Below, piece after piece: positions 617 to 31,786 of a DNA stretch of 64,000 nt. Positions within the stretch are counted from its first letter, which is position 1. Every line of letters begins with the position of its first letter. Origin of the DNA: Aplysia californica (Eukaryota); assembly GCF_000002075.1 (NCBI RefSeq), contig NW_004797318.1, positions 459,127-523,126 of the forward strand, read 5' to 3'. The translations under genes and the position numbers were made by a program. The notes below the pieces were generated by a model that was not told the origin of the DNA, searched no databases, and was given only the letters and a program-made list of their open reading frames with translations.

Positions 617-644
617 ATGGATCCTGTCGAAGAAGTCCTGCTAC
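617..644 (+). CDS. Tudor-Schlafen gene exon 1 (MDPVEEVLL)
   Basis: ATG in a GCCATGG context, strong C|GTAAGT donor; phase 1 matches the exon 2 acceptor. Confidence 0.65.
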
Positions 645-1185
645 GTAAGTTTATTATATCTCTAGCCTAGTCTAGAGTGGTTGGACCCCATACGAACCAT
701 TACCCAATATGAACCACCCGTCGCTTGTTTCGTTATGTAATGTGGTGAAATAGAAGACCAATTTCGTGAACCTATTCGCGAAGGCGTGGCTTTCATCCTT
801 CAATTTTATGTCTATAGTCTAGATCTAAATCTAGATCTAAACCTAGAATCTAGAGTCTAGATATTTAGGGGCTAATTTGTTGTTTTCCCAAAACATCGTT
901 GCGGGCGCTCCGAGTCTGAGGCATTTTGAGCTCTCTGGACACCTGAACTTGCATGATCACATCTCACGCTGGGTGTGTAGATGATCGGCCTTCAACTGTG
1001 ATGGGAAGTCCTCTCCTTTCCTGACCGCTGCAACAGTTCTTGGGAGGACTTCCGTAACGAGCGACCACTATGAGACAGCAGAATTGAGGGCTTGGGGTAG
1101 GGGTAGGGGTCTAGGCCTCTTTATTGTGTTTGATGGGAAGTCCTTCCCAGTTCTTGTTGTCTTTACTCCTGAATTTGTAAGATAC

Positions 1186-2521
1186 TCTGTGTAAGACGGC
1201 CACCCATTGTCAAGGAGAAAAGTGGCCGTATAAGACAGGTGGCTGTCTTAGGCAGGACTGATCAAGATGAAGAAAACAAATAATTCCTATCAGGGGTCCC
1301 AATCGAAAGTAGCCGCATTGTTGTTGTTTTTGTTGGTGGTGGTTTGTATTTTGTTGCTGATTTTGCACAAGGGTGACAATAAAACGAAATGTATCAGACA
1401 AGGAAGACTGAGTGCCATACATGTAAAAACAAACTCATGGGTCGCTACCACTCGGAGAACGAACGACGTTTGTCACAAGTTCATGTTGACGTCCTTTGTT
1501 ACTTTGTTACAGACTGGGTTAACAGTGACCACTCATCTCACTTACGATTTTGGGGGGCTCTCGTGGCCTAGAGTCTAGAGGTTTAGGTGTTGGCCTCTCA
1601 TTCAAAGGTCCCGGGTTCGAATCCGGGTAGCGACCGAAAAATTTTCTTCTCTAAAATTGTCTCCTTTCACCTCCTTTCCTGCTCTCTAGCAATGTTCTGT
1701 TGTCTGCTTTCAATTCCACTTTCTGCCCCCACCCCCTCACCTCCTTTGCCCCCTCCTCTGGGCTCCTGACTCTTTCTGCAGCCTTTCTACTGCTACTCCT
1801 TGGCTCCTCCTTACTGCTGTCTTTCTGCCACACCCCTGATCTTCTGGTAGGAAAGATCATCTACACCTAGTCTTCTCGGACAAGGGCGAAAAATCTCGGA
1901 GGGCCCGTGTGCAAGTTGCGCACGTTAAAGATCCCTTGGTGATATAAAATCGATAAGAGTAGGCTTCGGCCGCCACTCGGGCAAAATTCAAAATTTCCTA
2001 CTAACTGAAAATATTAGGTGTGTCCCGCGCGCTCATATGACCTATGCAGTTGCGAGCGCCGTAAAACACTTTACAAAACAAACAAACTTACGATTTGTGT
2101 TTAAGTTTTGGGCGGGGTTTATGGGTTATGAGGGATCACACGCTTTCCTCACCAGCAGCTGAAGATTGGTAGCTATTGGTCAACAAACAGTGGGAAGGGC
2201 CTACGCAACATGATCTGTTGGAGGGACTACCTAACAACAACGACAGGGGATTGAATTATGACGGCTCGCCCTCAACGCAGGGGGGCAATGCACAATTTAT
2301 TACTAAACGAAATGGAGTCACTAAGGTGGCCGTCTAAGACAGGTTTTATTGCTCAGTGTGATAGGGGTTGTGTGTTAAAATAAGGTGTCCGCGGCTGCGT
2401 TGGACAGGTGCCCGTTGTACACAGTTAAATTATATAGAAAAACCGCAAGGGGGGAAATGGAAAGTGGCCGTTTGTACAGGTGGCTGTCTTATAGAGGTGG
2501 CCGTCAGGGCAGGTTCGACTG
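1186..2521. mobile_element. pogo/Tigger-like MITE, left end eroded, interrupted by the family A SINE
   Basis: Homologous to 21350-21830; right end CAGGTTCGACTG|TA. Confidence 0.75.
1551..2085 (+). mobile_element. tRNA-derived SINE with Deu/Nin-like central domain and I/Nimb-type LINE tail (family A)
   Basis: A box (GTGGCCTAGAG) and B box (GGTTCGAATCC); CTTCTCGGACAAGG...GCACGTTAAAGATCCC core; GCGCTCATATGACC...GAGCGCCGTAAAAC tail; (AAAC)n end; TSD ACTTACGATTT at 1540-1550 and 2086-2096. Confidence 0.88.
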
Positions 2522-2719
2522 TATGTAGATAGACTGAATTTTAATTGGTGTGGGCAAAACTCGATGGTGCGTGGTGATGACAAAGGCAGGAGAACTCTGT
2601 CAGAGATGGAAATATGAATTTTGGAGGTAAAGGGGAGAGGAGCAAAACATATAGACAGAGACTGGCGCTTAAATCATGACCAAAATTGTGTCAATAGTGC
2701 TGTAAAACGTCTACTCAAT

Positions 2720-4125
2720 CAGAGCTGTTAAAGTATTTTTTAAAAGGTACTTTTTAAGTACAAATTTAAGTACAATCTAAAATATGAACAGTAAAAGTAC
2801 TTAAATCCTGTAAAATGTACTTGAGTACAAGTTTTTAAAAAGTACATGAGTACATTTTGAGCACTTTCTGCTAATATGATAAAACACTTCAGTGCTAATG
2901 CAAAACATCATATTGAATAACATATATCTAGTATTTGACAAATTAGGCCATTTATTACTAATAACGTAATACAAAGCATTTGAATATATATACTTACTGA
3001 AAGTAGGTGGAAATGGTCAGTGAAATTGAAAAAAAAACCCAGCAAACAAACAGACGCAACTAGTGACTAAGTGATGTTATAAATAGAACTTGTTTGAGCA
3101 AGACAATATGATCAAATGTAAGTCAGTCCTAGAGGTTGGAAAGTAGGAAATTATTATTCAATTGGACCGCACGAATATTCAAATTCAGTCTGTCTAGCAA
3201 ATTGTGGTGCAGAGTCAACTGCTGCAGTGGTCAGGGAAATAAAAGCGCAGTAGTTCACAGTTCGATGTGATCCCGTCTGACGTGGACGTGTAGACCCTAC
3301 CCATTCAGTTTGAGTTTGTGATGAAAGTTCACATGGAGTGCTCGGGTGCAAGTGTGATGTTGGGAGAAAACAAATGAACATGTTCATACGTCGGTATGAT
3401 CCCGAATGGGGCCAACATTGTGTACCGTTTCATTGAGATGAACAACGGAGATGTGGTCACTTTCATGAGGGTGGATGATCTGTGTAACACAATGGGAAGT
3501 ACAATGATCGCTTATTTTTACTGCTGCTTGTCTGATCGGCTGCACCAACCCAGATTTTTGTTCCTTGAATTATGATCTGAAATATGGGATCTTAGCTTCG
3601 GAGCGAGATCTTCGGGGTGACTAATGTGTTGCAAAAGTTCTGTTTTCTTGAACAGCGGGACCTTCAGCGAACCGGTATTGTAGGCTGTGGGACCTTGTGG
3701 CAGAGACTAATGTATTATAGGCCTATCTCATAAACTAATAATTTGCTGTGGGTGTGGTAAAAATTCATGTTAAAAAGCAGATAAGAATGAAAAAGAAAAG
3801 TGCTTTAATAGAATTTTGTACACATACGTGAGAGTATTGAGACTGGACTGTAAGTAAAATAGTATGGTTAACTTAAATACTTTCCCTCCCACAGGCAGAT
3901 ATGCACTACTTTTAACACTGCCATCATATTTTAGGGAAAATCCAAAGAAATCATCAATCGGCGAGATGAGGTGGCAAAGTGTTAAGGGTTAAACCAATGT
4001 ATTTTTAACTGCTGAAACACTCAATTCATTTTTATGGCCACGAAAACTTAATTTTGGTTGAATCGAAATGGAAATACATGATTTCAGATTCAGATTTTTA
4101 TCCGTCTTTGACTTTGACAACACTG
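2720..4125. mobile_element. Non-autonomous TIR DNA transposon (hAT/P-like)
   Basis: Imperfect TIR CAGAGCTGTTAAAGT / ACTTTGACAACACTG; flanks ACTCAAT and AATCAAT; subterminal AAGTAC repeats. Confidence 0.55.
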
Positions 4126-5441
4126 AATCAATGATACTGTAACATACAATCTATAAACAACAAACAGTAAAAGCATGAACAAAACACATTTTGGTGCAGC
4201 TGCAGACTCAAATATAATTTGAAACTCACAACTTTGACTTTGGTATTATTTTACTTTCCATCGAAATTGTCACCATCGTCTTCATTCACCTCTTTCTCTC
4301 TGGTATTGCGTATAGTGCACCAAATACTGTTAAGGACTCTTCACCTGCCTCTGTTCTGGTCAATCTTCTCCAAATCCAGCCGTGTCCCATGCCTGCATTC
4401 TGCCTCTAAATCTTGCTCCTTGCTGGATCTCGGCCTCCCTTTCTTTCTCTTTTCTTGGGGGCTGCGTCTTAGGCCTTGTCTTTGTAAGTTGTTACTCAGT
4501 CCATTGCCATCTTCTCATCTCTTGATCTCATTGCCAACTGGCTGTTGTTTGGTTCGTCACCTATCCTGAGAGCTTTTTATAAAACGAATGCTGCCAAGAC
4601 TCAAACACCCCCTGCATCATTGTTATTCACAAACAAAACAACACAAGAGAAAACAATTCAAACATTTAAAACCACTGGCTGAGGTGTCTTTAGGCCTTTC
4701 CCATAGGGGAACGTGTTTTTTCTTTTCTCATCCTTACTGTCGTCATTTGTCCTCTACTTCTTAAATTTTGTATGTTTGTTACACTCTTGTGACCTGCTCT
4801 TTCAGGGGTTCCTTGATAACTGCACTGTTATGAGCTTGACATTGATAAATCAGCCCATTTAGTTTTACTATTCTACTGTGCATAAGAACATGTTAATGTC
4901 CCCCCTTTGGGAATGGCCTAAAGACACTTCACTGCCCCGGGGGTAGCTAGGCTTTACACAGCCACACAACTTTTTGGCAAACAATCAAGATGACACAGGT
5001 GTGCATTTAAACGAATCGGTCTTCTTTTGCACAGCTTATACTATGCTGGCATTTCAGGCACCACTTTTTACTTTTCTTTATACATTACTTGCTCAGTGCC
5101 TGTAATCATCTACACAAAAACCTTATGTTTGCTATAACGAACACTCGGATTCAACGAGATTTTAGGTCAGGCCCGGCGACCTGGTTGAGTCCGAGTTTCA
5201 CTGTATTCCTGGCGGTGTTGGACAGGGATTACTGTGCATGGAATAACAGTATAGGAAGAGGCGTCAATGAACGGTTGCTATTGGTACTGGTGTCTGTCAT
5301 GGTAAACTTACTTCAAAGGCGGGCGTGACTCTACCTGTTGTAATTTATGTTTGATTATTTCTAAAAAAAACTCTATTTTGTTCTCAATTATAATATATGT
5401 AAAAATATGGTTGTGAAAATTAAGTTTTTCATTTATTTCAG

Positions 5442-6656
5442 ATTTGACAGACGTCATGTCGGCATCGAAGTCAAAGTCAAAGTCAAAGTCAAAGTATGCT
5501 GATGTGTCTCAGTACTTGTTCAAGGTATTGAGTTTCTCGAATTGGTCATCAATGGTCTCCGTTTCAGGCATGGCTATGGTGTCAGACCTATGCAACAAAG
5601 ACAAAGACGAAGGATTTCGAAAGGCTGCCATTGATAATGGCGTTGTGAAGCAGTTGGTTGGTATTCTGAGCAGACGGAATGAATATTTTCATGGAAGTGT
5701 AGAGCAAATAGAATCCCTGCTTAAACCTAAGTCTCCTCAAGGTTCTTTAGATCTTTCAGAAGATTCGACCGCTGTAAGGGTGCCTCTGCAAACAACCCTT
5801 GCTTTGAAATGCATTTATGAATTTTGCTCAATTTATAGTATTCACCACTACAAGTTTCTGGATGAGAGTTTTCTGCAATGCCTGTTAGGATATTTGACTA
5901 TGCATCGTGATGCTTCGATGAACAATTTCCAAAGCTTTTATCAGTTTGGACCTTCGTTCACAATGGCTTTGAAAGACATTGTCAGGTCCTATGGATTTGA
6001 TATGAAGGTATCAGCCAACTGGGACAGCCCTATCAATGCACAGGGGGAACTGTTATTTTACAAACCTGCTTTCATGAAAGTGAAAGATGTTCAGTTGAAA
6101 AGCAGAAGTGTTTGGTATGTAACGATTAGAGACGGAAGTTTGAACCCTGATAGTGACCTACACAAGAGACTTATTAAAGAGAAAGTTGCTTGGGAGAAAG
6201 GGCTTGATCTTGGGGAAGTAGGAGCGCATTCAGAATGGCGGAAAAATGGGACCAAAAATGCCCCTGAATCACCCACAGCCAGTTTGGAACTCACAGCCCT
6301 GAAATGGAAGAGTTGTTGTGTGACAAGTGTTGTCAATGGAAACTTCCTGTGGGCTTTGCTTGGTGATGACACAATAAAAACAGCATCTGCTATCTCGTCG
6401 TCGCTCAAGAAAGATCTTCCTTCATTGAAGAAAGCCAAGCCACACCCTGATGATGTGGTGGTTGTGGAGGCACAGTCTCCATCGGAGCGAGACGTTTTTC
6501 GTGCTCGGGTTGTGGAGGCAGCTGGGGGTGTGGTCACGGTGTTTGGGGTGGACAGTGGAGTCATGAGAAAAGTGCCAATCCACTGCGTCTATGCTCTGCC
6601 TTCGCATCTCACTCTGGAGGAGATCCCAGCAACAGTCTCGCTCGTTCGTTTAAAAG
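5442..6656 (+). CDS. Tudor-Schlafen gene exon 2 (ARM-like repeat plus extended Tudor module)
   Basis: 406-aa ORF 5444-6664 with TTTCAG acceptor and G|GTGAGT donor. ARM-like FRKAAIDNGVVKQLVGIL; Tudor-like CVTSVVNGNFLWA...VFRARVVEAAGGVVTVFGVDSG...IPATVSLVRLKG. Confidence 0.9.
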
Positions 6657-7389
6657 GTGAGTAATTGTGGTCGTTTACGTTGTCTGGCTATGGTTGGATA
6701 GCCCACAGTGGTTTTTTTCCTGAATGCCCCCCTTGTGACAAAATGGCAAGAAGAGTCATGTAATCAAAGATACTGTACCCTACGGTAAGATGCTACAGCT
6801 GCACCTTTCCCTAGACTCTAAAAATATGTAACCAGCGTAAAATAGGTCACGCCCCCAGCGAGCGTGTGACTGAGCCCTGATGACTTGGCAAGGGCTTGTT
6901 GGATAGAATGAGAGCGTCCTAGTTAATCCTACTCTAGGCCCCATTCTTATCTAGATCTAAATAATTATTAGATCTATCTACTAAACTAAAGTATTGATCA
7001 ACGTATTCCGATAATTTATCAAGATCTAAATTATTTTAAAAGAAAAACATTAGGTTTAAAAATAGTCTGACTTCGCTAAGGAGTGATAAGATCAGAGGAT
7101 ATACTGGTACCGGGTGCATAGGCTCATGATCCACTAAATGCAAATCTAGCCCTAGACAGTGACTCACGAAGTCTAGGCCTAGAATCTGTCCAATACAATG
7201 TTATTGATAGTATTGATGAGATAGTATAAGTCATTAAGTAGTGATGACAGGATCTCTGGGAGTATGTATTATAAGAATTCAAAAGATAGTGTCAATTAGT
7301 ATTAGATACACCGAGGAACGCTGCAACAGAAGAAGAGAGAGAGAGAGAGAGAGAATACAACATAGAAGTATGTCTTATTAACTCGATAT

Positions 7390-7427
<38 letters not shown>

Positions 7428-8019
7428 ATATATATAACATTTACATCTAGATTCTAGATCTACACCTAATGGAATGGGCCCGTACAAAAAGTACAGAGTA
7501 AAGCATTGGTCCTAGTCACGGATGCAAATTGTAAACAAAGCTTACAGGCTGAACTCTGATAGACCCCTCTCTAGTAGTTTAACTCTAATCTAGACTCTAC
7601 ACTAAAAAATCAATTTCTCATTGTCTTTCCTTTCTTGGTCCTTTGGGAATCTGAAGAAAGACAGTGGTTTGGGTGTTTCCTCCGGAATTAGAACAGCCCA
7701 TCGCTGAACAGAACTGGCCAGTATAGGCCGACAGGCATTGCGTTTCACTCGCCATGTTTACACACTGTCACATGCTCGCCGCTAGGTGGCGCTGGGCGTC
7801 GTTGTACCTCACAAAATTGGACAAGTGGAACATCTTAGTTTAGGGTATATAGGGAGGTTATACAGTTGTTGTAATGTAAGGTCCTTAGGGTATATTATCT
7901 CTGATGTACAGAAGAACACGGCTATTGCGGGACTGCTATGGGAATGCAAAGGGGAGATTACCGAAAATTTTCTTAAAATCCACATGATTACCTCCCTTCA
8001 ATATTGATAAAATTTGCAC

Positions 8020-8113
8020 TTTAGATTAGTCTTCCTTTTCTTGTCAACTTCGTTTATTATCTCAGCCTTTAATTCGAGTGAGAAGCGTTTCATTAAGTCT
8101 TTGTTGGAAGCCA
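8020..8113 (-). pseudogene. Remnant of a pogo/Tigger transposase N-terminus (CENP-B HTH_psq-like)
   Basis: MASNKDLMKRFSLELKAEIINEVDKKRK resembles the KRxxLSLExKxEII motif; short and truncated. Confidence 0.45.
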
Positions 8114-8329
8114 TCTTTTTCTCGATCTTGTTGCATGTGCTGTCTATCGTACCGGAAGGCCCACTGTAGAACTGGTGAAGGGGATGTGTGCGTATGCCTG
8201 AGGAATCACGCACTACACGCTCTCCTCTTCTTTTACTTTATAGCCCAGCCTAGGGCTATGGCCTATACGCTCTTATTCTGTACGGTACTGAGTGTCTAGG
8301 CTATGGCACATCACTGTATACTACATTTT

Positions 8330-8990
8330 GGAGTGGCTCACGTAATACGTCTCTCCGCACCGTCTCTCTCTGCCGCCTGCTCCACCTCACTCATCACTGG
8401 ACTGGCCAATCACAATTCCACACCGCTAACTGCCCGTTTAGATCCCGCCCGTTTAGATCCCGCCTACAGCCCCCCACCCCCAACCTCCTTCCCCTCAGCT
8501 AGAGCTCGCTCGGTCAGTCCCGCTGTATCCAAGTTCGGGCCTTTCCTTGCCCCGTTAAACCCGAGCACAGGAATGAGTTTGCATTTTTAAAAAGGGGGGT
8601 TTCGGTGAGGGCCCGCTGCAGCGGGTGCCGCTATAGTCATGTTCTACTGTATAGATCTACATCTCCTTTGGAGTGGTCCATGTAACGCCTCTCTCCGCAC
8701 TCCACACCATCTCTCTCTCTCGGCCTACTGCCTGCCCCACCTCACTCATCACTGGACTAGCCAATCACAAAGCCTCACCGCTGACTGCCTGTTTGGAGTC
8801 CGACTACAGCCCCCCCCCCCCCACCCCCACAGCTAAAGTTCGCTCGATCTCTCCTGCTCAACTGCTGTATCCGAGTTTGAGACTTTCCTTTCCTCGCTAT
8901 ATCCAAGCATAAGCAATTGAGTTTGCATATAGGAGAAAGAAAAGAGGATTCCGATAAGGTCCTGCGCTAGTCATGTTCTACTGTATTTTA
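8330..8990. repeat. Diverged tandem duplication of an approximately 325-bp unit (possible Helitron-like non-autonomous element)
   Basis: Shared blocks TTTGGAGTGG, CCACCTCACTCATCACTGGACT and TAGTCATGTTCTACTGTAT in both units. Confidence 0.75.
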
Positions 8991-9474
8991 TATTGTGTTT
9001 TACCAAGATGTCTTAGCAGAAGAGATTATAATATTATAATGTCAACTGAAACAGACTAAATTAGTTTGCACTTACTTTTGAAGAAGTCAAAACTCAATTT
9101 GTCTTTTTGTTTAGGGTGGGTACAGCTACATAGGGAAATAGGTAAGGCCAACAGAATTCATTCTGTAATTATGGAAATGGACTGAGTGTGAGGCCTGGCT
9201 CGCTTTCTGGGATTGGTCCAATGAACTTCCAAGCACACTGTTTCTTGTCAGTTTGTGTGTTCCCACACTCCACCTTTCCTTTGAGGTGTGATTTTTTTTC
9301 CTGCTCCCTTAAAATGGAAGGTTCAGCACAATATGTATCATGATGTAGAGAGCACCTGAAGTGTATGACATCTTATTCAGTGACAAAGTTCTCTTGTTTT
9401 GAGAATATCGTATAAAATTTCAGTTGTCTGTGAAGTATGAATACTGACAAAATATGCTGTTTCTCTCTCCCAAG

Positions 9475-9544
9475 GTATTAACCCACCACCTGTGGATCCT
9501 CGTGGTGTTGAATTGGCGGCTGCCTCTCTGATGTTGGTCTCCAG
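9475..9544 (+). CDS. Tudor-Schlafen gene exon 3 (GINPPPVDPRGVELAAASLMLVS)
   Basis: CCCAAG acceptor, AG|GTGAGT donor; completes the LxGIxP motif that follows extended Tudor cores. Confidence 0.85.
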
Positions 9545-9979
9545 GTGAGTGTTTGTGTAGTGTTTTGATGGTATAAATAAAAGCATTGTTTGATCGGGCC
9601 TTTAATTTTGGATGTCCTACTTTTTCCCAAAAAATCTTTAACAGTAATTACAATGGTGTCAGTTATCTAAATATACCTTAGAGCCCCATTTTATCTAGTA
9701 GGGATTTATTCTTTATAGCATGGAGGGCACCACTGGTAGGTTATATGATATTTTCTTTCCCTCTGTTGTTTTTCTGTATTAGTTTTTTCCAGCACTGAAT
9801 GACCCTTTTATTGGCGCTCATAAATGACCTTATCACATGCATTTGCGAGCGCCGTAAAACCCTCTACTATAAAAAAAAAAAAATGACCCTTTTATGTTGA
9901 TGGGTTTCTCTTTACTCAAACACCAGCTCATAGGACGACAAAGTCCTCTATCTGCGTCCCACTTTTATTTGTTCTCTAG

Positions 9980-10161
9980 GAACAGTATCAACACCTGCAG
10001 TCAGCTCCTGGAATTGGACCTCTTGACACAGTTTCCGGATCTGATCCACAGTCCTGACCCCCATGTAAGTTGTCAGGCACTCTCCCTGGCTGCAACACTG
10101 GTGACGGGAAAGGCAAGGAAATGTTGCAAGAAATGGCTCAAGATTCTCTTCGCTACTTTAG
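9980..10161 (+). CDS. Tudor-Schlafen gene exon 4 (ARM-like; NSINTCSQLLELDLLTQFPDLIHSPDPHVSCQALSLAATL...)
   Basis: TCTCTAG acceptor, G|GTATGT donor; in frame with ORF 9894-10169. Confidence 0.85.
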
Positions 10162-10641
10162 GTATGTGATTATTGACTGTTGTTGTTGTTGTTGTATTGC
10201 TGTTCCTGCAGCTCATGTGTTGATGTTTGCCCTTTTGGCTCTTCTGCCCTGCCAAGTATTCCAAGAAAATCTGATTTGTTTTTCTTTGTCTTTCTGAAGT
10301 CCCCAATTAGTTCTGCGAAAATACAAAACCTTTTGGATGGGGCGAAAGTTTTAACTTGTTATACCTACATTGGCTTGGTTTATGCAAATTAGTATATATT
10401 TATATTTAAAATTAGTAAGCACTGAGTGCCTAATTTAAAAAAAAAAAAGAATTTTTTAAAGTTACTGATAATTTGGATGAAAATTTCCAAGTGTTCTGAT
10501 TTGTGACTAAATTGTTGCTGCTTATAATGCCTTTCCTGAGGCCTGATGGTATAAGTTGTGGTTGGTACTTCTGACAATCTGGAGTAAGGAAGCACAGTTT
10601 TAATATTAGTGTCTAATATTTGCTTATTTTGTGTTTTCCAG

Positions 10642-10766
10642 TTGTCTTGAATAGATGTGTGCAGCGTCAATTACAGCATGCGGAGAACCAACGCTCTGAG
10701 ACTACGACTGACAAAGTGTGTCAGAAAAGCCTGCGGTTATCTGACATCAGCCCAGCGGACAATTCT
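10642..10766 (+). CDS. Tudor-Schlafen gene exon 5 (VVLNRCVQRQ...SPADNS)
   Basis: TTTTCCAG acceptor, weaker GTAAAT donor; phases fit both neighbours. Confidence 0.7.
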
Positions 10767-11722
10767 GTAAATATATAATTTCACAGTTGTTAAGCAGTTC
10801 TGTTATCATTCTCCTCGGGGACTGGAATTTTCTTCTGTAAGTCCTACTTGTTTCTGGTCTGTCTGTCGTCTATATTCTGTATTTCATATTGGTTTTCTCC
10901 TGCTGTGTAGATAGTCGGTGGGTGCTCTGATATCTTCTTTTTTTCAGTTGCAATTCTAAGTCTGTATCCCGGGGAAATACAGTGGTTGTCACCCAGTCTT
11001 GTCACAGTCTGCAACTTAAAAGCCTTTTATTACTTTGCTTTGTTCTAATGTCCCTCTTTTGTGAGTTACCTCTGTATGAGAAGTCTGGCAGCTTATGGGG
11101 TCATTTGCTCTTACCCAGTGAGCATGTAAGGGGATGGGCTCTAATCTTTTAGGTTTAGCTGGATGTGTTAGTTTTAATGTGCCATGGTTAGTAGGAATAA
11201 GTTTTCTGCTTTTTTAAATCACATCCTTACTTTTCTACGAAGTTCATTCTCTGCCTAAGAAGCCGTTTTTGCAATGCAACAGAATTTTAAAAAATAATTT
11301 GCATGACTATGAACCTTTCTAAAATAGAAACCTGACGACCCATTTAGAGATGAGGCAATGAGATATTTCGTCACTGCTTCAGCATACTTTGTTTATGTTG
11401 GGGAGAAGGAAGAGAGGTTGGCATTGATGAGCAGACAACAGTGTCTACCTATCACAAGCCTGCTTACACTGAACGTATTCTTTAGTCAGGTTCATGGGCC
11501 GTGCCAAGAGGGTCAGTCTTCACATCCATTTGTACTATCAGTTGGTTCTGTCATAAAGCTAGTACTAGTAGGCTGCAGCACTGTATGTCACATGAGGAAC
11601 TATTGTTTTGATTTGGAATAGACAGTCTGAGAATTATTGTGAAGTGCTGTTGTATGAAATTTCTGGTGAATGGATTACCATACTAAGAACTGTAACTTTC
11701 CTTTTACAATTCTTTGTTTCAG

Positions 11723-11807
11723 AACATCATTTCATCTTGCTTGCAGCTTCTTGTCAACCGTCTGTACATGTGCCGAGAAGCGAAAAACTTTTTCTACCGC
11801 GTTCAAG
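11723..11807 (+). CDS. Tudor-Schlafen gene exon 6 (NIISSCLQLLVNRLYMCREAKNFFYRVQ)
   Basis: TTTCAG acceptor, G|GTATGC donor; ARM-like helix pattern. Confidence 0.8.
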
Positions 11808-11915
11808 GTATGCCCATGGTTTCTCACTGTTCACATAAGGCAGCGGGTGGTTGGAAGGTGCCATTGGCAGGTCCTACTTCTTTATCGTTGCCGTGATTTT
11901 TGTCTATTGGCCCTG

Positions 11916-23362: not shown

Positions 23363-24861
23363 ACCCTGAAGTTAGTTTCTGGGATCTTTTCTACCCTGAG
23401 ATCAGGGATGTGGCTGAAAGACAGCACTAAGAAGGAGCCAGGAGTTACGGAGTAGCAGCAGCAAGAGTCAGGTACAAAGCAGATATGTGCCCAGATGCAG
23501 CCAGGGGTTCGGAGTAGAAGGTGAAGAGGAAAGTGGATTACAGAACAGGACTAGAGAACAGGGAAGGGCGTAAAAGGAAAAAAATTTAGTGAAGAAAAAT
23601 TTGTTGTCTCTTGGCAGATTTCTGGGGCCTATTGAATGAAGTGCGAACACCGTATCTCTAGACTCTAGACTAGACCTAGACATAAGGGAGAAGGAAGGCA
23701 GTGCCCTATATGTGCTTCCCAGGAAGTTCAGATTGTTTCAGAATGTTTTTAGGTCTGCTGGGGTAATGATATTGATCATAAAAAGCATAGATCTTGTTGT
23801 TGAGTGGGAACTTGGGCTGTACAAAATCCGATTTAGAGTTGATAGAAGTAAGTTTGATGTATGTTCTGTAGGGATCCCAAAAATGTCACAAGACTGGCTC
23901 TGAACTGGAGTCTTTAACACTTTTAGTACGGTCTGCAAATTTTGTCGCCAGGCCGTAGTATGCTCTCATTATCGCTGGTGACCTAGGTCTCCAACTTGAC
24001 CAGCACACTAAACATAATTAAACAACAAATGAGGCCACTTTGTTGAAGTAAATACCACCCAATAAGTTGCCCTATATGAAAGCTGAATGGTTGATGAAAC
24101 TCTGAATTTTTAAAGCGTATTTTTTTGGCTGTGAACGTTTTTAAAAATTCTTTAAAATTCTATCTTGGTTTCAGCATTCTAAACTGGTGTGGTACTTGAG
24201 GGGTTTCCTCTGTATGAGCCTTCAGTACTGTAAGTGTTAAGAAAACGGAAGAGTTCATCTCAGGAACACATGGTGCAGATCCATAAAGGCTGGCTAAGAT
24301 GAGTTCACAGTCTTGATGCACTGGTGCATTTGGTGTAATGGCTGTGCACTTTGCCTTGCTCACGAAAGAAATTGAATTATTCAATTCTCAAGTGAGAGAT
24401 CTATTTCCATTTGTCTATCCGTGTCTTTCAGATGGGGTGTACTCCACACAACTAATGTTGGTCGTGAATGATGTTAATTATGTCCATTGTGGTTTTAAAC
24501 ATTTACAATCCCTGAATCAGTCAAGAGATTTTCTGGCAAGTTTCAGTTTCTCGTGTTTCTCTTCTATATAATGAATTGTTTCACATTTTTAAATCCTCCA
24601 GTTCCTTAAAATGTTTCATTTGTGGCAGTGGGTAATTGTAAATTCACAATCATTTACAAAAAGAAAGAATTCATGCCTTTTCTGAGAGGTAAAAGGCTTG
24701 TAATCTTTTTTATCCGTTTTAAAAATAATGCTGTGGTGTTGATGAATAAACCAAATGGGTTCCAGGGAAACTGAAACAAGCCAGATGGTGTTTTTGATGA
24801 AATGCACGGCTGTTCTTCACATATCTTCTCTGCTCAGATCAATCTGATTGTCCCTTTTCAG

Positions 24862-24924
24862 ATGGAGCGGTGATGGACATAGAGAGTTGTCTAAAGAATG
24901 GAAATGTCCCTTTCTACGTAGCAG
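24862..24924 (+). CDS. Tudor-Schlafen gene exon 10 (DGAVMDIESCLKNGNVPFYVA)
   Basis: TTTTCAG acceptor, G|GTAAGA donor; phase 1-1. Confidence 0.8.
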
Positions 24925-25373
24925 GTAAGAAAATAAAGTTTGCGCTCTTGTCTTACAACCACTATTAATGAAACTGATGTGTCTCGAAATATATTTCTAA
25001 AAGTTTCGTTGATGTATTCAAGTGTCTATGCCAGCTTTAGATGTTTTGGTGTGAACATGGCTGGTCAATTTTGACACAGTGTCTTTTGCACTCAGTTTGG
25101 AAGTTGGTGCTTCACCAGTATGAGACAGATTGAATTGATTTTATTTCTGGCAAGCAGTCTGTGGTGGTTCTGCTCAACTAGAGTTGTAAGAAGGGTTATA
25201 AATGGATATGTCCTTCTTTTCTTTTTGACTTAATTTTTGTCTTGTCTTTGCCCATAAAGTCCAAGCTTCCAACGGCTTTTTCTGGATTAACTTGACAATT
25301 TTCTTGAACTATTTTCCTTCAGCGACTGGAATAGTAATTATTAATAAATTTTTTTATTGGGTTTCCCTTTGAA

Positions 25374-25568
25374 AATTAATTTATTGTATTTTTTTCTAAG
25401 AATGTAGCTATTGTAACCTTGAGCATGGTTATGTGAATTAATTTATTGTATTTTTTTCTAAGAATGTAGCTATTGTAACCTTGAGCATGGTTATGTGAAT
25501 TAATTTAATGTATTTTTTTCTAAGAATGTAGCTATTGTAATTAACCTTGAGCATGGTTATGTGAATTG
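25374..25568. repeat. Three tandem copies of an approximately 62-bp intronic unit
   Basis: AATTAATTTATTGTATTTTTTTCTAAGAATGTAGCTATTGTAACCTTGAGCATGGTTATGTG three times. Confidence 0.9.
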
Positions 25569-25690
25569 AATATATAGACTCTTTGCAATGTCAAAGTATG
25601 TTTGGTCGCTACACTGCCAGTCCACACCTTCGTGATGTTGTCATCAGCAAAATTTCTCTACGTTATATTTTCCTATTCTCTTTTCTTCAG

Positions 25691-25795
25691 AAAGCTTTGT
25701 GTCGTTCCGGCCTGATGACCGTCATGAGCTGTTCCAGACTGCCCAGCTCAATATGGCCTCATTTGCCACTGTCATCTGTGGGATGCTGAACACAG
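25691..25795 (+). CDS. Tudor-Schlafen gene exon 11 (Schlafen domain start: ESFVSFRPDDRHELF...VICGMLNT)
   Basis: TTCTTCAG acceptor, G|GTATGC donor; ICGMLNT matches the Schlafen (V/I)CAFLN(S/T) motif. Confidence 0.88.
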
Positions 25796-26327
25796 GTATG
25801 CTCTTGTCGGATCACATTAGATAGAATTTTTTTGGTGGTTTTTAGGAAGAAAAATTGAAGTTATCGATCAATGATTTTTTTTTGTTGGTATGTTTTATGC
25901 CATTTTAAATTATTTATCATGATTTTTGTCTATTAGAAAGGATCTGAAGTTTGCATTGTGAAGACTGAGCAAAAGAGCACAGACATTATGGATACTGTCA
26001 CAAAAACACATATACCACTTACAGCATTTTGCGTAAAGTGTAATCCTGACCCAAGGTCATTGTTGTCTGTTGGCTCTTATGTCACGTTATAAAAAGATCT
26101 CAAAATATAGTACTGGTATAGTTTGGGTTAAGATTTGGTGACTCAACAATGATATCTCTTCACTGTTGTTTAAACTGCAATTATCATCAAGGTCTTACCT
26201 TATGTTGTTGTGGGTGTAAAGTAAGTGGTAGGAGGGTGCTACTAGTAGGTTGGGGTTTGTTTTTTTCTTCCCTCTGTCGTTTCTTTGTCTTATCTGTCAT
26301 ACCTTTTCCATTGACTAGGACTGTTAT

Positions 26328-26505
26328 GTGGGTGGTTGGCGGGTGCCCTAGTGTGGTTTGCTCCTTCTTTCCTATCAAATATTTGTTGTCCTTATCTCTC
26401 CTCCTCCTTTTTCATGTTTGTTACTCTCTTGTAACACCTCTAATCGTCGGTACTTGTATGCTCTAATTGTGTTGAAAGTGTGGTAAAACTCTTACTAAAA
26501 CTAAA
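26328..26505 (+). mobile_element. Family C short retroposon copy
   Basis: GTGGGTGGTTGGCGGGTG...GTAAAACTCTTACTAAAACTAAAA. Confidence 0.8.
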
Positions 26506-26661
26506 AAACTTTTTCTTTTCTTTCTCTTTGTTGGTTCCTTTTATCTATTTTACCTTTTCCATGCACAAGAGTTGTTACCATGGTGATTTGCTTCTCTTTA
26601 CGTAAAAGGAACAAAATTAACTCACTCTTATAGTGCAGTCATCTCACCCGTTTGTCTCTAG

Positions 26662-26895
26662 GCCACGAAGGTACCATCTATCTGGGCATTTCGGAGACAG
26701 GCCAGGTGGATGGCGTGGAGCTGTCACATGACTTCCGAGACGATATCAGACTGGGCGTGGACAAGATAATGATGTCACGACTGACACCCACCGTGCTGCA
26801 CTCACAGTTCAAGGTTATCTATGTGCCTGTGGTGAAGTGGGTCGGAGATGATAAAGAGCGACACGTAGCTCGTGTCGCCAACCGCTATGTCGTGG
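26662..26895 (+). CDS. Tudor-Schlafen gene exon 12 (Schlafen/AlbA_2 core GHEGTIYLGISETGQVDGVEL...RYVV)
   Basis: TCTCTAG acceptor, G|GTGAGT donor; GGxhhhGhxDxGxVxG-like signature. Confidence 0.9.
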
Positions 26896-27779
26896 GTGAG
26901 TATCCTCAATGCCTGTTGTTCATGTTGCCCTGTGTATTTGTTTCATTTTCAAATTGTACACTGTGCATGGTGGTATTGTGTTGGTAGTGCTGTGAAATGT
27001 ATGTTCCACCTTTTGGCCATTCTCAAAGGGGGGACATTTCTCGTTCAAGCATAGTAGAATTGTAAATGGGCTGACTCATGTCACGCTCTTAACTGTGCCT
27101 GATCTACAACAGGGAACTTCTGCTTTTTCTTTCCTGATCCTTACTACTGTCATTTTCCTCTACTTCTTTTGTATGTTTGTCACTCTCTTGTGACCTGCTA
27201 TTTTGGGGTGCCTTGATAGTCGAAGCAGACCTTGTGCTGTTGAAGCTACAGAGGTGAGCAGTCTTAAGTCTGATTCCCTGTTAAGACTTCTCTGTTGACA
27301 CCCACCCCTTGGCGCTCATATGACCTTATGCAGTTGCGAGCGCAGTAAAACCCTCTACTATAAAAAAAAAAAAGAAAAGAGCTTCTTTGATAGGTCTTTT
27401 CTTTCTCTCTGGTGTTTGTATCTCTGTCTGTCTTACTTTTTCCCAGCAGTAAATGACCGATATTGCGTCTTCGTTCTTTTTACTTAAAACACTTTGAGGG
27501 TGGGACTAGATGGGGATAGATGTTTCTCTTACTTGGATAAAAAATGGATAGAAGTGTACTTTTTTGATCCAGCAGCCATCTGAGTTCGAGCCCTTCGGCC
27601 TGTAAAAAATATGGAAAGCATCGTGAATTTGCATTTCATCTTTGCTCAAAGCCATGTTAATCTTCCTGGTATTGTTTAATTTTTTGAAGTGCTGCATGTA
27701 CAGTGAAGGATAGATCATGTATGAAAATGCCAAACAAAAGCCTCTCAGTCTTTATCATTGTTTGCATTCTGTCTTACAG

Positions 27780-27877
27780 AGATCTCATTCAAACCCGTGC
27801 CTAAAGTGATTTACTGCTGCAAAGGGGATGAGAGCTACTACCGCACAGGTTCCACCACTATGAAGCTCAGCCAACAG
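27780..27877 (+). CDS. Tudor-Schlafen gene exon 13 (EISFKPVPKVIYCCKGDESYYRTGSTTMKLSQQ)
   Basis: TTACAG acceptor, CAG|GTACTG donor; VVEI...YxRxGSST-like AlbA_2 C-terminal motif. Confidence 0.88.
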
Positions 27878-30349
27878 GTACTGAAAACTGTAGCAAACCA
27901 GGTAGCGATCCTGGGTCTTTTTAAAGATCTTTGTTCTCTCTCAACCTCCTTTTTGTATTGTATTGATTGCTTTAGTGGGGGGGGGGTTGGATTTAGCTTT
28001 GTACTTGCGTCGTTACTTTAAGTTGCTGCTTTTTCTTTCTTCATCCTTACTTTCGTCATTTTGCCTCTTCTTCTTTTGTATGTTTGTCACTCTCTTGTGA
28101 ACTGCTATTTCCGGGGTGCCTTGATAGTCGAAGCAGACTTTGTGCTGTTGAGGCTAGAGAGGTGAGCAGAGTAAGCCTGATTCCCCGTTTCAACTTCTCT
28201 GTTGACATCCACCCCTTGGTGCTCATATGACCTTATGCAGTTGCGAGTGCCGTAAAACCTTACTAAAACTAAAGTTACAGCGTGAGTATATCACTGCTGG
28301 AATCCTCAGCTTTGTCAGGGAAGTCCTAGGTGTATGTTATGGGCATGAGGGGACCATGTCATCTGTTACAATAGACTGCACGTGAATGTGAATGAGATCA
28401 CGTTAGTTTGATTCCTGTGTCGGGAGAAATTTTATCGAGTATCCCGGTCTTTCTGCTAGAACGTTGTATCCCTTTCAGCCCGATTTGGCCCTGGCAGGTA
28501 TAGTAGAAGACTGTTCCTTCTAAATTATCTAAATTGTGTTGATGGGGGTGTAAAAACACCTGCATCAGTTAGCTTGACTGGTGGGTACTCTAACATTGTG
28601 GAGGCAGGAAGGACTGCGTTTGTTAACTTGATCAGCATTTTTACATTATGAACTCTGCTCTAGAAGAGTTAAAATAAACGCTAGTTTTACCGACTGTACA
28701 GTACGAAACAACCTACTCAATAAGACTCACCAGATCAGCAAGAAAGCAAGCCCACCCCAAACGTACATGCGCAATTCCAAATACACTCTTATCTATCTCT
28801 TGTAATGCTTACCATCTTGTCATGGCTGGTGCAGAAGTAAGGGTGATAACAGAAAACGCTTTATACTATAACTAGGTAGGCTAGCCCAAACTTGGTAAAA
28901 TCCCCCATTTTGGGTTAATTTTGACAATTTTTTTGAAAGCATTGTTCTCTTATGTCTGCAAGAACTGCTATGTCCAGTACATGTCAAAGTCATCTTTTTC
29001 CTTTCATGAAATATATCCAGTGGAACTTGGATTCAACAAACTTGAATTCAATGAAAGGGGCTGAATTCCCAGATTTTTTTATTTTCCTAAAAGTCAATAA
29101 AAATAACTTAAATTCAACGAATAGGCTACTATATGAGCAGGCTCGGATTCAATGAAGTCACTTGCAGGCTGAACAGCCCTCGATGACATGGCTTCGCTCA
29201 GTTTTCACACGAAACGACCCTTATCTGTTCTTAGAGACCATCCATGGCACCTGCATCGTGCACAAGGAGTTTAGAACTAATGGAGCCTCCTCTCTCTCTT
29301 CGCGGCGCCACGAGCAGTACGCCGNNNNNNNNNNNNNNNNNNNNNNNNNNNNNNNNNNNNNNNNNNNNNNNNNNNNNNNNNNNNNNNNNNNNNNNNNNNN
29401 NNNNNNNNNNNNNNNNNNNNNNNNCAGGTACTGAAAACTGTAGCAAACCAGGTAGCGATCCTGGGTCTTTTTAAAGATCTTTGTTCTCTCTCAACCTCCT
29501 TTTTGTATTCATCCAGCAAATGAAAATGCCTCTCATTTGAAACCAAAATGCTTTTGATTGAAAAAGTCAAGAACATTGATGGGCCTACATTGTTTGCGTA
29601 GTGCATGTAACTATCTCCACAAAAGCCTCATGTTCAACGAGATTGAAGCTCTGGCTCGATGACTTTGTTGAATCCGAGTTCGTCTGTAGTTTTATGTATT
29701 TGAAGTCGTAAGTTTGTGTGCCCTGTCCATTGAAAAAGATTATATACGTTTGTGCTGGTTTTGCGAGTACAAAACAACTTTTGTGGCACTCTTTGCCTTG
29801 CGCTTTGCATGAAAAGGAGCATATGAATTAGAAACTATTACAAAAAGAAAGTCAAATAAATAAGCTTTACTTTAAGTTTAAGATATCGTTTGTTGTTGCT
29901 TCAAGCCAAACCTAGCTTTGAAAATGCATTTGAAATCTTTCAAGTCCAAAACATCAAGAAAAAAGACAAGGGGCAAATTTATTCAAAAATGGAGCTGAAC
30001 ACAAGGGCTTTTAAAAACCAAACCGGGGATGATTATTTTCGCAAAATGTGAACCATTGCAAAACATGACCATGTTATGGCTTCTGGGCATGGTGCCAACC
30101 ATTGCTAGCAACAGTACATGTACTGGGGGAGAGTTGACTCCTGAGTGTGATGTTCGAGTGAATCCTTACCAAAGTTTTTGAGGCCGTGTCCTTTTGAATG
30201 AAGAATGAAAAGCAAATTTTAGACTTTCAAATATTGACTTTCTTTTTCTCGAGATAAAAATAAAAATTGAGCTTGTTGAAGGTGATACTGGTTTGCATTT
30301 TAGAAAATATTAAGCGTCTGGCTGTATTAGTTTTTGTGTTGTGATGAGT

Positions 30350-30754
30350 TTGTTTTAATAGAGGTTTTACGGCGCTCGCAACTGCATAAGGTCATATGAG
30401 TGCCAAGGGGTGGATGTCAACAGAGAAGTCCTTACTGGGAATCGAACTTACTCTTCGTACCTCTCTAGCATCAACAGCACAAAGTCTGCTTCGACTGTCA
30501 AGGCTCCCCAGAAATAGCAGGTCACAAGAGTGCGACAAACATACGAAAGTAGAGGAAAATGGCGATAATAAGGATTAGGAAAGAAAAAGCTGCAGTTCCC
30601 TGTTGCAATTCAGACACAGTTATGAGCCTGACCTTGATGAATCAGCCCATTTACAATTACAATTCTACTGTGCCTAAGAACTTGAGATGTCAATGCCCTT
30701 TGGGAATGGCCTAAAGTCCCTAAAGACCCTTCAGTCAGTAGCACCGCCGGGGGG
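30350..30754 (-). mobile_element. Family B retroposon, full length
   Basis: 15-bp TSD TGTGTTGTGATGAGT at 30335-30349 and 30755-30769. Confidence 0.88.
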
Positions 30755-31678
30755 TGTGTTGTGATGAGTGAAAAATGACTTTTCGTCTATGTTCACAAGG
30801 TTATAGTTAGGGGAGTGTACCCCCTCCGGGAAAAATGCTGCAACTCGCTTAACTCTGTATCTCCTGGGGGGGGCTAACCCACTACACCAGAGCCCTTTTT
30901 TGGTACTAAATCTAAAATGACGATAACGTCACTCAATGGGTCATTAAAATAATTATATCGAAACTAACGAACCTATTATGATAGCTCTTCATGTAATGAA
31001 TGAACTTCAGGTAAAAGAAACCTGCTTTCGGCAGTTGTCGTAAAGTAATTTGATGTCAGAGTCGCTGAAAAGGAATGTACCCGAGCTGCTGGGAGCTGCT
31101 TATCGGAGATAAAGAGTTAATAATCACCACAGAAGATCTATTTGATATCAATGTAAACAGAAAGAAAACTGTATTTGATAGTGTTAAGAAAGCCAACCTC
31201 TGCTCGTGTAAAAATTTGCATTTGGACTGTGTATCATAACAACAACAAAAATTAATGTTGTTTCCAAGGAAGCATTTTCTTTTATAATATAATAAGGAAG
31301 TTATAATCAAAATTGTATTCTTAAAAACATTGATTTGGGATGTTTTCATTCTTGGTAAAAGCATTCAGTTTTTTTGGCTCTACTCTCCTGTAAAATTGTA
31401 AAAACTGCATGTAATAATAATATGCAGTACTTTTAAAAATGACGGCAGCATGGTCTTGTAGAAGGTCAAGCTTTCTGTGTGTCAACAAGACACTGAAGAA
31501 TATTACTAGCGCTTACTTGCTCATGGTAGCTTTTTATAGCGTAAAGTGGTCCGTTTTCAGTAACCTCAGCTTTCAGTTCATAACCCACCCGAGATATAGC
31601 TTCAATATCTAAATATGTATACTGTACATACACATGTTTTTGGTTCTGTGAAGTAATTGCTGGTTGTTTCCCTTCCAG

Positions 31679-31786
31679 GATGTCCGTCACATGATCGTCA
31701 TTGAGGAGGAGGCTTGGCACAGGGACCAGATTATTTCTCTTCAAAAACAGCTCAAGGAACTCAAAGATATTGATGATAGACTTTAA
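31679..31786 (+). CDS. Tudor-Schlafen gene exon 14, terminal (DVRHMIVIEEEAWHRDQIISLQKQLKELKDIDDRL*)
   Basis: CCTTCCAG acceptor, phase 0, heptad coiled-coil pattern, TAA at 31784-31786. Confidence 0.82.
   Translation, partial: DVRHMIVIEEEAWHRDQIISLQKQLKELKDIDDRL

What the first reader, a model, noticed from the sequence alone, without database searches (positions are those of the whole stretch)
617..31786. Undescribed-looking ARM-Tudor-Schlafen fusion protein: candidate metazoan counterpart of the PETISCO/PUCH small-RNA processing link
Seen: a phase-consistent 14-exon, 876-aa ORF with ARM-like helical repeats on both sides of an extended-Tudor module, an acidic linker, one Schlafen/AlbA_2 domain and a C-terminal coiled coil. 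Established: extended Tudor domains are hallmarks of piRNA/germ-granule proteins, and Schlafen domains are RNA endonucleases. In C. elegans the single-Schlafen-domain proteins TOFU-1, TOFU-2 and SLFL-3/4 form the piRNA 5'-processing nuclease PUCH, which docks on PETISCO through the extended Tudor domain of TOFU-6. Inference: one polypeptide joining these modules suggests a Schlafen-based small-RNA processing or transposon/antiviral defence complex outside nematodes, with this protein as scaffold. I know no named gene with this architecture but cannot search databases.
Basis: partly seen in the sequence, partly recalled or inferred. Interest (0 to 1): 0.9.

Follow-up and report, generated by a model that had tools for sequence, protein, structure and literature searches.

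The report
Mollusc ARM-Tudor-Schlafen fusion protein gene
The window holds a real sea-hare (Aplysia) gene, already annotated but uncharacterised and conserved across snails and clams, that joins a protein-docking Tudor module inside an armadillo-repeat scaffold to one Schlafen-type RNA-nuclease fold; its function is untested, and the proposed piRNA link is only a hypothesis.

Summary
The 14-exon, 876-aa chain is letter-identical to RefSeq XP_005092617.1, 'uncharacterized protein LOC101856162 isoform X2' of Aplysia californica. All splice sites are GT-AG, and the three assembly gaps lie in introns 7, 8 and 13.

Pfam finds Tudor and Schlafen AlbA_2 above their cut-offs. AlphaFold models plus structure searches confirm three folds:
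- one armadillo (ARM) solenoid, residues 24-600, Z about 22;
- a Tudor module inserted in it, about 195-415, Z 11-12 against extended Tudor domains;
- a single Schlafen/AlbA_2 lobe, 690-840, closest to SAMD9 and SLFN12/11/13.
A disordered acidic linker and a C-terminal helix complete the protein.

Orthologues with the same layout occur in at least 13 gastropods and bivalves, all uncharacterised. One is an uninterrupted 767-aa ORF on a 2.7-kb contig assembled from a public sequencing run, so the fusion is one mRNA there.

- the Tudor methyl-arginine cage is degenerate;
- the state of the Schlafen acidic site is unresolved;
- there is no significant similarity to the C. elegans PUCH/PETISCO proteins;
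- no relative was seen outside molluscs;

It is a new architecture built from known domains. Two earlier notes on this same window touch it; nothing was found on other DNA.

The parts
617..644 (+). Coding exon 1 of isoform X2 (residues 1-9 plus one base). This N-terminal extension is not conserved, and isoform X3 lacks it.
   Evidence: The orthologues' start Met aligns with residue 15.
5442..6656 (+). Exon 2 (residues 10-414). It encodes the N-terminal ARM helices, the strands and helices that precede the Tudor core, and the Tudor core itself.
   Evidence: Pfam Tudor E 5e-6. Model md2f20ab20fe2 has pLDDT 78. Extended Tudor structures match at Z 11-12, rmsd 1.5-2.4 A. ARM proteins match exon residues 14-166 at Z 12-13.6.
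9475..9544 (+). Exon 3 (residues 415-437). The ARM solenoid resumes here.
9980..10161 (+). Exon 4 (residues 438-498), central ARM repeats.
10642..10766 (+). Exon 5 (residues 499-540). An ARM helix followed by a low-confidence loop (520-532).
11723..11807 (+). Exon 6 (residues 541-568), ARM repeat.
16830..16968 (+). Exon 7 (residues 569-614). The last ARM repeat and the start of the linker.
17324..17456 (.). Assembly gap inside intron 7, flanked by (CA)n/(TG)n microsatellite.
18427..18532 (+). Exon 8 (residues 615-650), Ser-rich disordered linker.
19932..20085 (.). Assembly gap inside intron 8.
20217..20498 (+). Tandem repeat of 92 nt, 3.1 copies, 97% matches. It triplicates the 3' end of intron 8 and the first 53 nt of exon 9. 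Only the third copy runs on to a donor site.
20446..20518 (+). Exon 9 (residues 651-674), the acidic stretch of the linker.
24862..24924 (+). Exon 10 (residues 675-695). Isoforms X1 and X3 use an acceptor 24 nt upstream (24838), which adds 8 residues.
25691..25795 (+). Exon 11 (residues 696-730). It encodes the first Schlafen strand, with D704, H707 and E708, and helix 1.
26662..26895 (+). Exon 12 (residues 731-808), the core of the Schlafen/AlbA_2 fold. It holds the NTGHEG loop, the GISE turn and the RLGVD helix.
27780..27877 (+). Exon 13 (residues 809-841), the last Schlafen strands, including the invariant E809.
29325..29424 (.). Assembly gap inside intron 13.
   Evidence: The alignment is uninterrupted across the exon 13/14 junction.
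31679..31786 (+). Exon 14 (residues 842-876 plus the TAA stop), a conserved charged C-terminal helix.

Best explanation
LOC101856162 encodes a cytoplasmic scaffold for RNA-protein complexes that carries its own single-lobe Schlafen module.

Shown:
- Residues 24-190 and 416-600 form one armadillo solenoid.
- A Tudor module (about 195-415) is inserted into that solenoid.
- A disordered acidic Ser/Asp-rich linker of about 90 residues tethers a single Schlafen/AlbA_2 lobe (690-840).
- A conserved charged helix (841-876) follows the lobe.
- The Schlafen lobe is the best-conserved part of the protein.

Inferred:
- The Tudor cage has lost most of its aromatic residues and its Asn. Tudor and ARM therefore probably dock unmethylated protein partners, as the TOFU-6 eTudor does, rather than reading dimethyl-arginine on PIWI.
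- The Schlafen lobe binds, and perhaps cuts, RNA. One lobe is half of a vertebrate Schlafen core and a third of PUCH, so it probably works only after pairing. The partner would be a second copy, perhaps joined through the C-terminal helix, or another Schlafen-fold protein; Aplysia has at least four other AlbA_2-matching places, on three contigs.
- The biological setting is RNA surveillance. Germline small-RNA or transposon control and antiviral or stress-induced RNA cleavage are both open.
For: Gene and architecture.

Folds:
- Pfam hits above cut-off.
- ARM profile E 7e-21.
- ARM proteins align over model residues 24..600 with 235-281 residues, Z 21-23 (most at rmsd 2.2-2.6 A), which makes one solenoid with an insert.
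- Extended Tudor structures match at Z 11-12.
- Foldseek finds the SAMD9 AlbA_2/tRNase domain (E 3e-5, target TM-score 0.54) and SLFN12, 11, 5, 13 and 14 (E 1e-4 to 8e-4).
- The Atlas places residues 690-876 among Schlafen AlbA_2 clusters that are commonest in Mollusca (score 0.93).

Conservation:
- At least 13 mollusc species carry it, and the tree follows the species tree.
- Mean pairwise identity is 37% in the Schlafen lobe against 13% in the linker.
- H707, R760, D764 and E809 are invariant.

One mRNA: P0043 is an uninterrupted 767-aa ORF on a 2668-nt contig, with AlbA_2 above the Pfam cut-off and Tudor just below it (21.7 vs 23 bits).

Degenerate Tudor cage: alignment to 2wac gives F to S355, Y to F362, Y to G378, Y to S381 and N to V383, and no family member has the Asn.

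Multimerisation of Schlafen folds is known to create nuclease activity (PMC10567574). Other Schlafen genes exist in Aplysia.
Against:
- Catalytic competence is unresolved. The position of SLFN12 D233 is H, K or R in the family, and E708 is His in caenogastropods.
- A coiled coil is not supported by heptad analysis, so self-pairing is a guess.
- Sequence alignments to solved Schlafens are weak (E 0.04 and 0.38) and place the first strand ambiguously.
Confidence: 0.45

Rival explanations
1. The protein is the molluscan counterpart of the PETISCO-PUCH link: a Tudor-docked Schlafen unit that takes part in 5' processing of piRNA or other small-RNA precursors in germ granules.
For: - In C. elegans an eTudor with a degenerate cage (TOFU-6) docks a Schlafen-fold nuclease built from single-lobe proteins (PMC10567574).
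- Here both folds sit in one chain and the cage is also degenerate. This is a Rosetta-stone type argument.
- The structure matches are dominated by piRNA-pathway eTudors: TDRD1, TDRD2, Papi, Tudor, Krimper and Spindle-E.
Against: - There is no significant sequence similarity to the TOFU or SLFL proteins (best is TOFU-6 at E 0.73).
- There is no transmembrane helix like that of SLFL-3/4 (maximum 19-residue Kyte-Doolittle hydropathy 1.45).
- The eTudor fold also occurs in the ubiquitous SND1.
- No germline expression data are available.
- According to the PUCH paper, flies and mice make piRNA 5' ends by PIWI slicing or by a separate endonuclease, so a Schlafen step is not expected outside nematodes.
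Confidence: 0.12
2. It is an innate-immune or stress effector of the SAMD9/SLFN type. The AlbA_2 lobe would be a tRNA or rRNA nuclease held in check by the ARM-Tudor part and released on infection.
For: - The best structural match of the lobe is the SAMD9 AlbA_2 tRNase domain (7ksp_B and 9o0d, E 3e-5 to 9e-5).
- AlbA_2 is a recurrent defence effector from bacteria to mammals, and the Avs9 AlbA_2 domain alone kills E. coli cells when expressed (PMC12680541).
- Acidic residues stand at plausible site positions in Aplysia (D704, E708, E742).
- The family evolves fast, with branch lengths around 1 change per site.
Against: - It is a single-copy orthologue that follows the species tree, with one duplication. 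Expanding, turning-over immune families look different.
- There is no NTPase or other sensor domain.
- The acidic site is not uniformly kept: E708 is His in caenogastropods and the third acid is missing in Ylistrum.
Confidence: 0.2
3. The fusion is a gene-model artefact: a Tudor-ARM gene and a Schlafen gene lie next to each other and were joined by the annotation pipeline.
For: - The joining region is a poorly conserved linker spread over short exons, and two assembly gaps lie in its introns.
- Aplysia RNA reads could not be consulted.
Against: - An uninterrupted ORF spanning all domains sits on a 2668-nt contig assembled from reads in a bivalve.
- The same architecture appears in independent annotations of at least 12 other species.
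- There are three Aplysia isoforms, and all of them span both halves.
Confidence: 0.03

Closest known systems
Vertebrate Schlafen nucleases (SLFN11/12/13/14; PDB 7lrc, 7fex, 5yd0, 7zel)
   Same: The AlbA_2/Schlafen fold is shared (Pfam PF04326, 35.5 bits; Foldseek E 1e-4 to 8e-4). Sequence motifs are also shared around the GG loop and the following strand.
   Different: Only one lobe is present instead of the two-lobed core. There is no helicase or other C-terminal domain. The acidic site is only partly recognisable. ARM and Tudor lie upstream, which no vertebrate Schlafen has. Aplysia has a separate two-lobed Schlafen gene elsewhere.
C. elegans PUCH (TOFU-1, TOFU-2, SLFL-3/4) docked on PETISCO through the TOFU-6 eTudor
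   Same: Both involve single-lobe Schlafen folds, and in both a Tudor with a degenerate aromatic cage acts as a docking module (PMC10567574).
   Different: In C. elegans these are separate polypeptides; here they are one chain. There is no significant sequence similarity, no transmembrane helix and no RRM. The role in piRNA processing is untested here.
SAMD9/SAMD9L AlbA_2 tRNase domain (PDB 7ksp, 9o0d)
   Same: It is the best structural match of the C-terminal lobe (E 3e-5, target TM-score 0.54). It is also a single AlbA_2 domain used as an effector inside a larger multidomain protein.
   Different: There are no SAM, SIR2, P-loop NTPase, TPR or OB domains. The set of three to four acidic residues is not clearly complete.
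Extended Tudor (eTudor) domains of TDRD proteins and SND1 (PDB 4b9w, 5j39, 3nth, 5ygb, 2wac)
   Same: Two SN-like strands, the linker helix, the Tudor barrel and one following strand superpose at rmsd 1.5-2.4 A over 110-115 residues, Z 11-12.
   Different: The aromatic cage and its Asn are lost. The C-terminal half of the SN-like domain does not follow the core, because the chain returns to the ARM solenoid. Extra strands upstream (about 197-255) may replace that half. The module is an insert in a repeat protein.
SLFNL1 (mammalian, testis-enriched, one C-terminal Schlafen fold)
   Same: It has a single C-terminal Schlafen fold after a long unrelated N-terminal part, and its function is unknown (PMC10567574; PMC12680541).
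   Different: The sources read here mention only the single C-terminal fold for SLFNL1, with no ARM or Tudor. Direct comparison was not possible: no SLFNL1 sequence was available from the tools.

Membership tests
Schlafen / AlbA_2 superfamily (PF04326) | Pfam model matched above the curated cut-off | tested here: met
   P0001 residues 720-838 score 35.5 bits against a cut-off of 25.3, E 1.6e-8. The orthologues reach E values down to 4.6e-11, though the truncated Nucella model P0025 has no AlbA_2 hit.
Schlafen / AlbA_2 superfamily (PF04326) | Fold match to solved Schlafen or AlbA_2 structures | tested here: met
   Foldseek finds SAMD9 AlbA_2 at E 3e-5 and SLFN12, 11, 5, 13 and 14 at E 1e-4 to 8e-4.
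Schlafen / AlbA_2 superfamily (PF04326) | Three to four acidic residues forming the ribonuclease site (PMC12680541) | tested here: inconclusive
   By spacing, D704, E708 and E742 could correspond to the first two Glu and the GVDD Asp. However, the SLFN12 D233 position is H, K or R, E708 is His in caenogastropods, and the alignments are weak and disagree. No residue-level superposition was available.
Vertebrate-type SLFN family | Two-lobed Schlafen core (N-lobe plus C-lobe) in one chain | tested here: not met
   There is only one lobe, at 690-840. A two-lobed gene exists elsewhere in the genome (L004).
Extended Tudor (TDRD / SND1 type) | Pfam TUDOR above the cut-off, plus a fold match | tested here: met
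   Pfam gives 26.8 bits against a cut-off of 23. Structure matches reach Z 11-12 at rmsd 1.5-2.4 A.
Extended Tudor (TDRD / SND1 type) | Aromatic cage (four aromatic residues plus Asn) that binds dimethyl-arginine | tested here: not met
   Only F362 remains in Aplysia. No family member has the Asn, and at most one or two aromatic residues survive. The mapping rests on a weak pairwise alignment (E 1.5) that agrees with the Pfam and fold matches.
Extended Tudor (TDRD / SND1 type) | Complete SN-like domain, with its larger half after the Tudor core | tested here: not met
   Matches cover only 110-127 residues of eTudor chains that are 167-217 residues long, and they stop at residue 414, where the ARM solenoid resumes. 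A permuted substitute upstream is possible but was not resolved.
Armadillo-repeat proteins | Tandem three-helix ARM repeats forming a superhelix | tested here: met
   The family profile matches ARM proteins at E 7e-21. VIA-align gives Z 21-23 with 235-281 residues aligned, most at rmsd 2.2-2.6 A. The Pfam Arm model itself stays just under its cut-off.
PUCH / PETISCO components | Sequence homology to TOFU-1, TOFU-2, SLFL-3/4 or TOFU-6 | tested here: not met
   The only hit is TOFU-6 (9g6z_A) at E 0.73, from the Sinanodonta orthologue.
PUCH / PETISCO components | Assembly of several Schlafen-fold subunits into an active nuclease that cuts capped piRNA precursors | not testable with these tools
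The test needs biochemistry.
SAMD9 / SAMD9L | SAM, AlbA_2, SIR2, P-loop NTPase, TPR and OB domains in that order | tested here: not met
   Only the AlbA_2 domain is shared. Pfam finds none of the others.

The most novel reading that the evidence does not exclude
The covalent fusion is Rosetta-stone evidence that Tudor-docked, multi-subunit Schlafen nucleases are not a nematode peculiarity. On this reading the protein is the molluscan scaffold-plus-subunit of a small-RNA (piRNA) precursor-processing nuclease. Its Schlafen lobe may use a family-specific invariant set of residues (H707, R760, D764, E809) rather than the canonical acidic triad.
Probability: 0.1. Interest if true: 0.85.

Novelty: new variant of a known kind. 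Interest (0 to 1): 0.5.

Why it matters
Schlafen folds are emerging as RNA nucleases in immunity (SLFN11-14, SAMD9) and, in nematodes, in piRNA 5'-end formation. There, single-lobe proteins become active only when assembled, and they are docked by a Tudor domain.

A family conserved since the gastropod-bivalve ancestor ties a Tudor module and a single Schlafen lobe into one chain. That gives an independent, testable hint that the two folds cooperate outside nematodes. It also points to a defined protein to express, assay and pull down in a phylum where RNA-surveillance factors are barely characterised.

The Tudor module inserted into an ARM solenoid is also an unusual structural arrangement. 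If the lobe proves inert and the partners unrelated to RNA, the family is simply one more lineage-specific scaffold.

Tried and rejected
- The search for homologous proteins with exon 2 found nothing, because its length window excludes the 876-aa protein.
- The same tool with the family alignment found only the query itself.
- With the Schlafen region of the Mercenaria orthologue it found two more bivalve members and nothing outside molluscs.
- The Atlas search with the whole protein gave no usable hit.
- phmmer of exon 2 and of P0001 against PDB sequences gave no significant hit.
No RNA reads could therefore be laid, and read laying was not used.
Self-association is therefore untested.
- My threading script first split exon 9 across two copies of the 92-nt repeat through a GC 'donor'. 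I rejected that in favour of the single exon 20446-20518 with canonical sites.
- I first read the Schlafen lobe as clearly lacking all catalytic acids, from the SLFN12 alignment. I withdrew that after spacing arguments and other alignments showed the first strand may be placed differently.
- The coiled-coil claim was not upheld by the heptad count.
- Paper searches for the locus names and for Schlafen with Tudor and armadillo, or with mollusc and piRNA, found nothing relevant.
The joined product was used only as the database record P0001 that a search with exon 2 returned.
Full report
WHAT IS THERE

The window is a piece of a 927-Mb, 4332-contig genome. Protein names returned later identify it as Aplysia californica.

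Exon 2 (window 5442-6656) is a 405-codon open stretch with a Pfam Tudor match. A full HMMER scan with this exon alone returned an 876-aa public protein that is 100% identical over the whole exon (P0001). It is XP_005092617.1, 'uncharacterized protein LOC101856162 isoform X2'.

Threading P0001 on the window gives 14 coding exons between 617 and 31786:
- every intron is GT-AG;
- phases are consistent;
- no exon contains N;
- the stop codon is TAA.

My script at first split exon 9 between two copies of a 92-nt tandem repeat. The sequence shows one exon at 20446-20518 with a normal acceptor and donor.

Two further annotated isoforms differ only slightly:
- one uses an acceptor 24 nt upstream of exon 10;
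- one starts at Met15 without coding exon 1.
Orthologues also start at that Met, so the nine codons of exon 1 are the weakest part of the model.

The joined product was used only as record P0001.

THE ASSEMBLY GAPS

The three gaps lie in introns 7, 8 and 13, each at least 356 nt from an exon. I did not try to fill them.
- At the exon 13/14 junction the alignment with orthologues is uninterrupted.
- Introns 7 and 8 interrupt the variable linker, where a small unseen exon cannot be excluded.

DOMAINS AND FOLDS

Pfam places Tudor at residues 303-410 and SLFN_AlbA_2 at 720-838, both above their cut-offs. A profile of 12 family members matches armadillo-repeat proteins in the PDB at E values down to 7e-21.

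An AlphaFold model of the whole protein has mean pLDDT 70, with the folded parts mostly in the 80s (72-93 by 10-residue block). Structure searches with it gave two results.
- Foldseek found three groups of hits:
  - the SAMD9 AlbA_2/tRNase domain;
  - SLFN12, 11, 5, 13 and 14;
  - extended Tudor domains.
- VIA-align laid ARM proteins on model residues 24..600, with 235-281 aligned residues at Z 21-23, most at rmsd 2.2-2.6 A.

The helices before and after the Tudor module therefore belong to one solenoid, and the Tudor module is an insert in it.

A separate model of exon 2 (pLDDT 78) matches eTudor structures at Z 11-12 and rmsd 1.5-2.4 A. The match covers protein residues 295-414: two SN-like strands, the linker helix, the barrel and one following strand. 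The larger C-terminal half of a canonical SN-like domain does not follow the core. Strands and helices upstream (about 197-255) may stand in for it; I could not resolve this.

Three other features were checked:
- Residues 601-689 are disordered, acidic (net charge -10) and poorly conserved.
- The last 36 residues form conserved charged helices, but heptad periodicity is weak, so a coiled coil is not shown.
- There is no hydrophobic segment fit for a membrane.

DISTRIBUTION

The same layout is found in two groups:
- Gastropods: Elysia (two species), Plakobranchus (a partial model), Babylonia (two paralogues), Nucella and Haliotis.
- Bivalves: Solemya, Ylistrum, Sinanodonta, Mya, Mercenaria and Mactra.
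All are named 'uncharacterized' or only after a domain.

A maximum-likelihood tree follows the species tree, with one caenogastropod duplication and long branches.

One member, P0043, is an uninterrupted 767-aa ORF with UTRs on a 2668-nt contig assembled from a public run. It is 67% identical to the Mercenaria protein. The genomic genes are split into many exons, so this contig is a spliced mRNA that spans every domain.

In Aplysia both halves are single copy. No relative outside molluscs turned up. However, the bivalve members were already at the detection limit of the single-sequence search (E 1e-5 to 1e-4), so absence elsewhere is not shown.

FUNCTIONAL RESIDUES

Tudor. In the alignment to Drosophila Tudor-SN, the four cage aromatics and the Asn correspond to S355, F362, G378, S381 and V383. 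Across the family the Asn is never present, and at most one or two aromatics remain. This argues against dimethyl-arginine reading. It resembles the degenerate cage of TOFU-6, which binds its partner on another surface (PMC10567574).

Schlafen. The active site of AlbA_2 nucleases consists of three to four acidic residues (PMC12680541).
- A phmmer alignment of the Sinanodonta orthologue with SLFN12 (E 0.04) would leave none of them.
- That alignment needs six gap positions. The predicted strand just before helix 1 is H707-E708-L709-F710.
- The spacing from that Glu to the acidic turn after the GG strand equals that in SLFN11/13. I worked this out and from the known residue numbers, which I recalled from memory.
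- On this reading D704, E708 and E742 could form the site.
- Against it, the position of SLFN12 D233 is H, K or R, E708 is His in caenogastropods, and Ylistrum lacks the third acid.
- hhalign against Aplysia's own two-lobed Schlafen gene covers only the GG-loop region.

I leave catalytic competence open. The family-specific invariant residues H707, R760, D764 and E809 deserve mutagenesis.

INTERPRETATION

The safest reading is a docking scaffold (ARM plus a cage-less Tudor) that carries a single Schlafen lobe on a flexible acidic tether. The lobe probably acts on RNA only when paired with another lobe. I put this at about 0.45.

The rivals are:
- A SAMD9/SLFN-like defence nuclease is about 0.2.
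- A mis-joined gene model is nearly excluded, about 0.03.

No paper in the library mentions the gene, its orthologues or the domain combination.

VERDICT

The gene is real, conserved and uncharacterised. It is a new arrangement of known domains and a reasonable candidate for experiment. Its link to small-RNA processing is a hypothesis without direct support.

Noticed in passing
window 20217-20498: A 92-nt unit is repeated 3.1 times at 97% identity. It covers the end of intron 8 and the first 53 nt of exon 9, just downstream of the assembly gap at 19932-20085. Copy 1 has CTG instead of the CAG acceptor. Copy 2 has an intact acceptor but no donor. The repeat could be a real duplication or an assembly artefact.
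   Followed up: partly
window 32811-35756, minus strand: ORFs that look like a Ty1/copia-type retrotransposon lie just downstream of the gene. They include a 293-aa gag-like ORF with a CCHC zinc knuckle and fragments that look integrase-like. The ORFs are broken into pieces. I only observed them.
   Followed up: no
window 57441-57928, minus strand: An open stretch carries a MIR-domain-like motif, of the kind seen in protein O-mannosyltransferase or SDF2. It is probably an exon of the next gene on the opposite strand.
   Followed up: no
L004 (G000:C131:333300-335300), ORF 361-1029: Aplysia has a separate Schlafen gene of the classical two-lobed type. It has an N-lobe CALLNSGGG motif and a C-lobe AFANHEGG...GIED motif. 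Further AlbA_2 matches lie on contigs C1194 (two) and C40. These are candidate partners for the single-lobe protein.
   Followed up: partly
window 17193-17604 and 17770-18009: Long (CA)n/(TG)n microsatellites flank the intron-7 assembly gap, which probably explains the gap.
   Followed up: no
P0019 and P0024 (Babylonia areolata), P0025 (Nucella): Caenogastropods carry two paralogues of the family. In both, the conserved Glu of the THEL strand is replaced by His. The Nucella model P0025 looks truncated or mis-predicted in its Schlafen part.
   Followed up: partly
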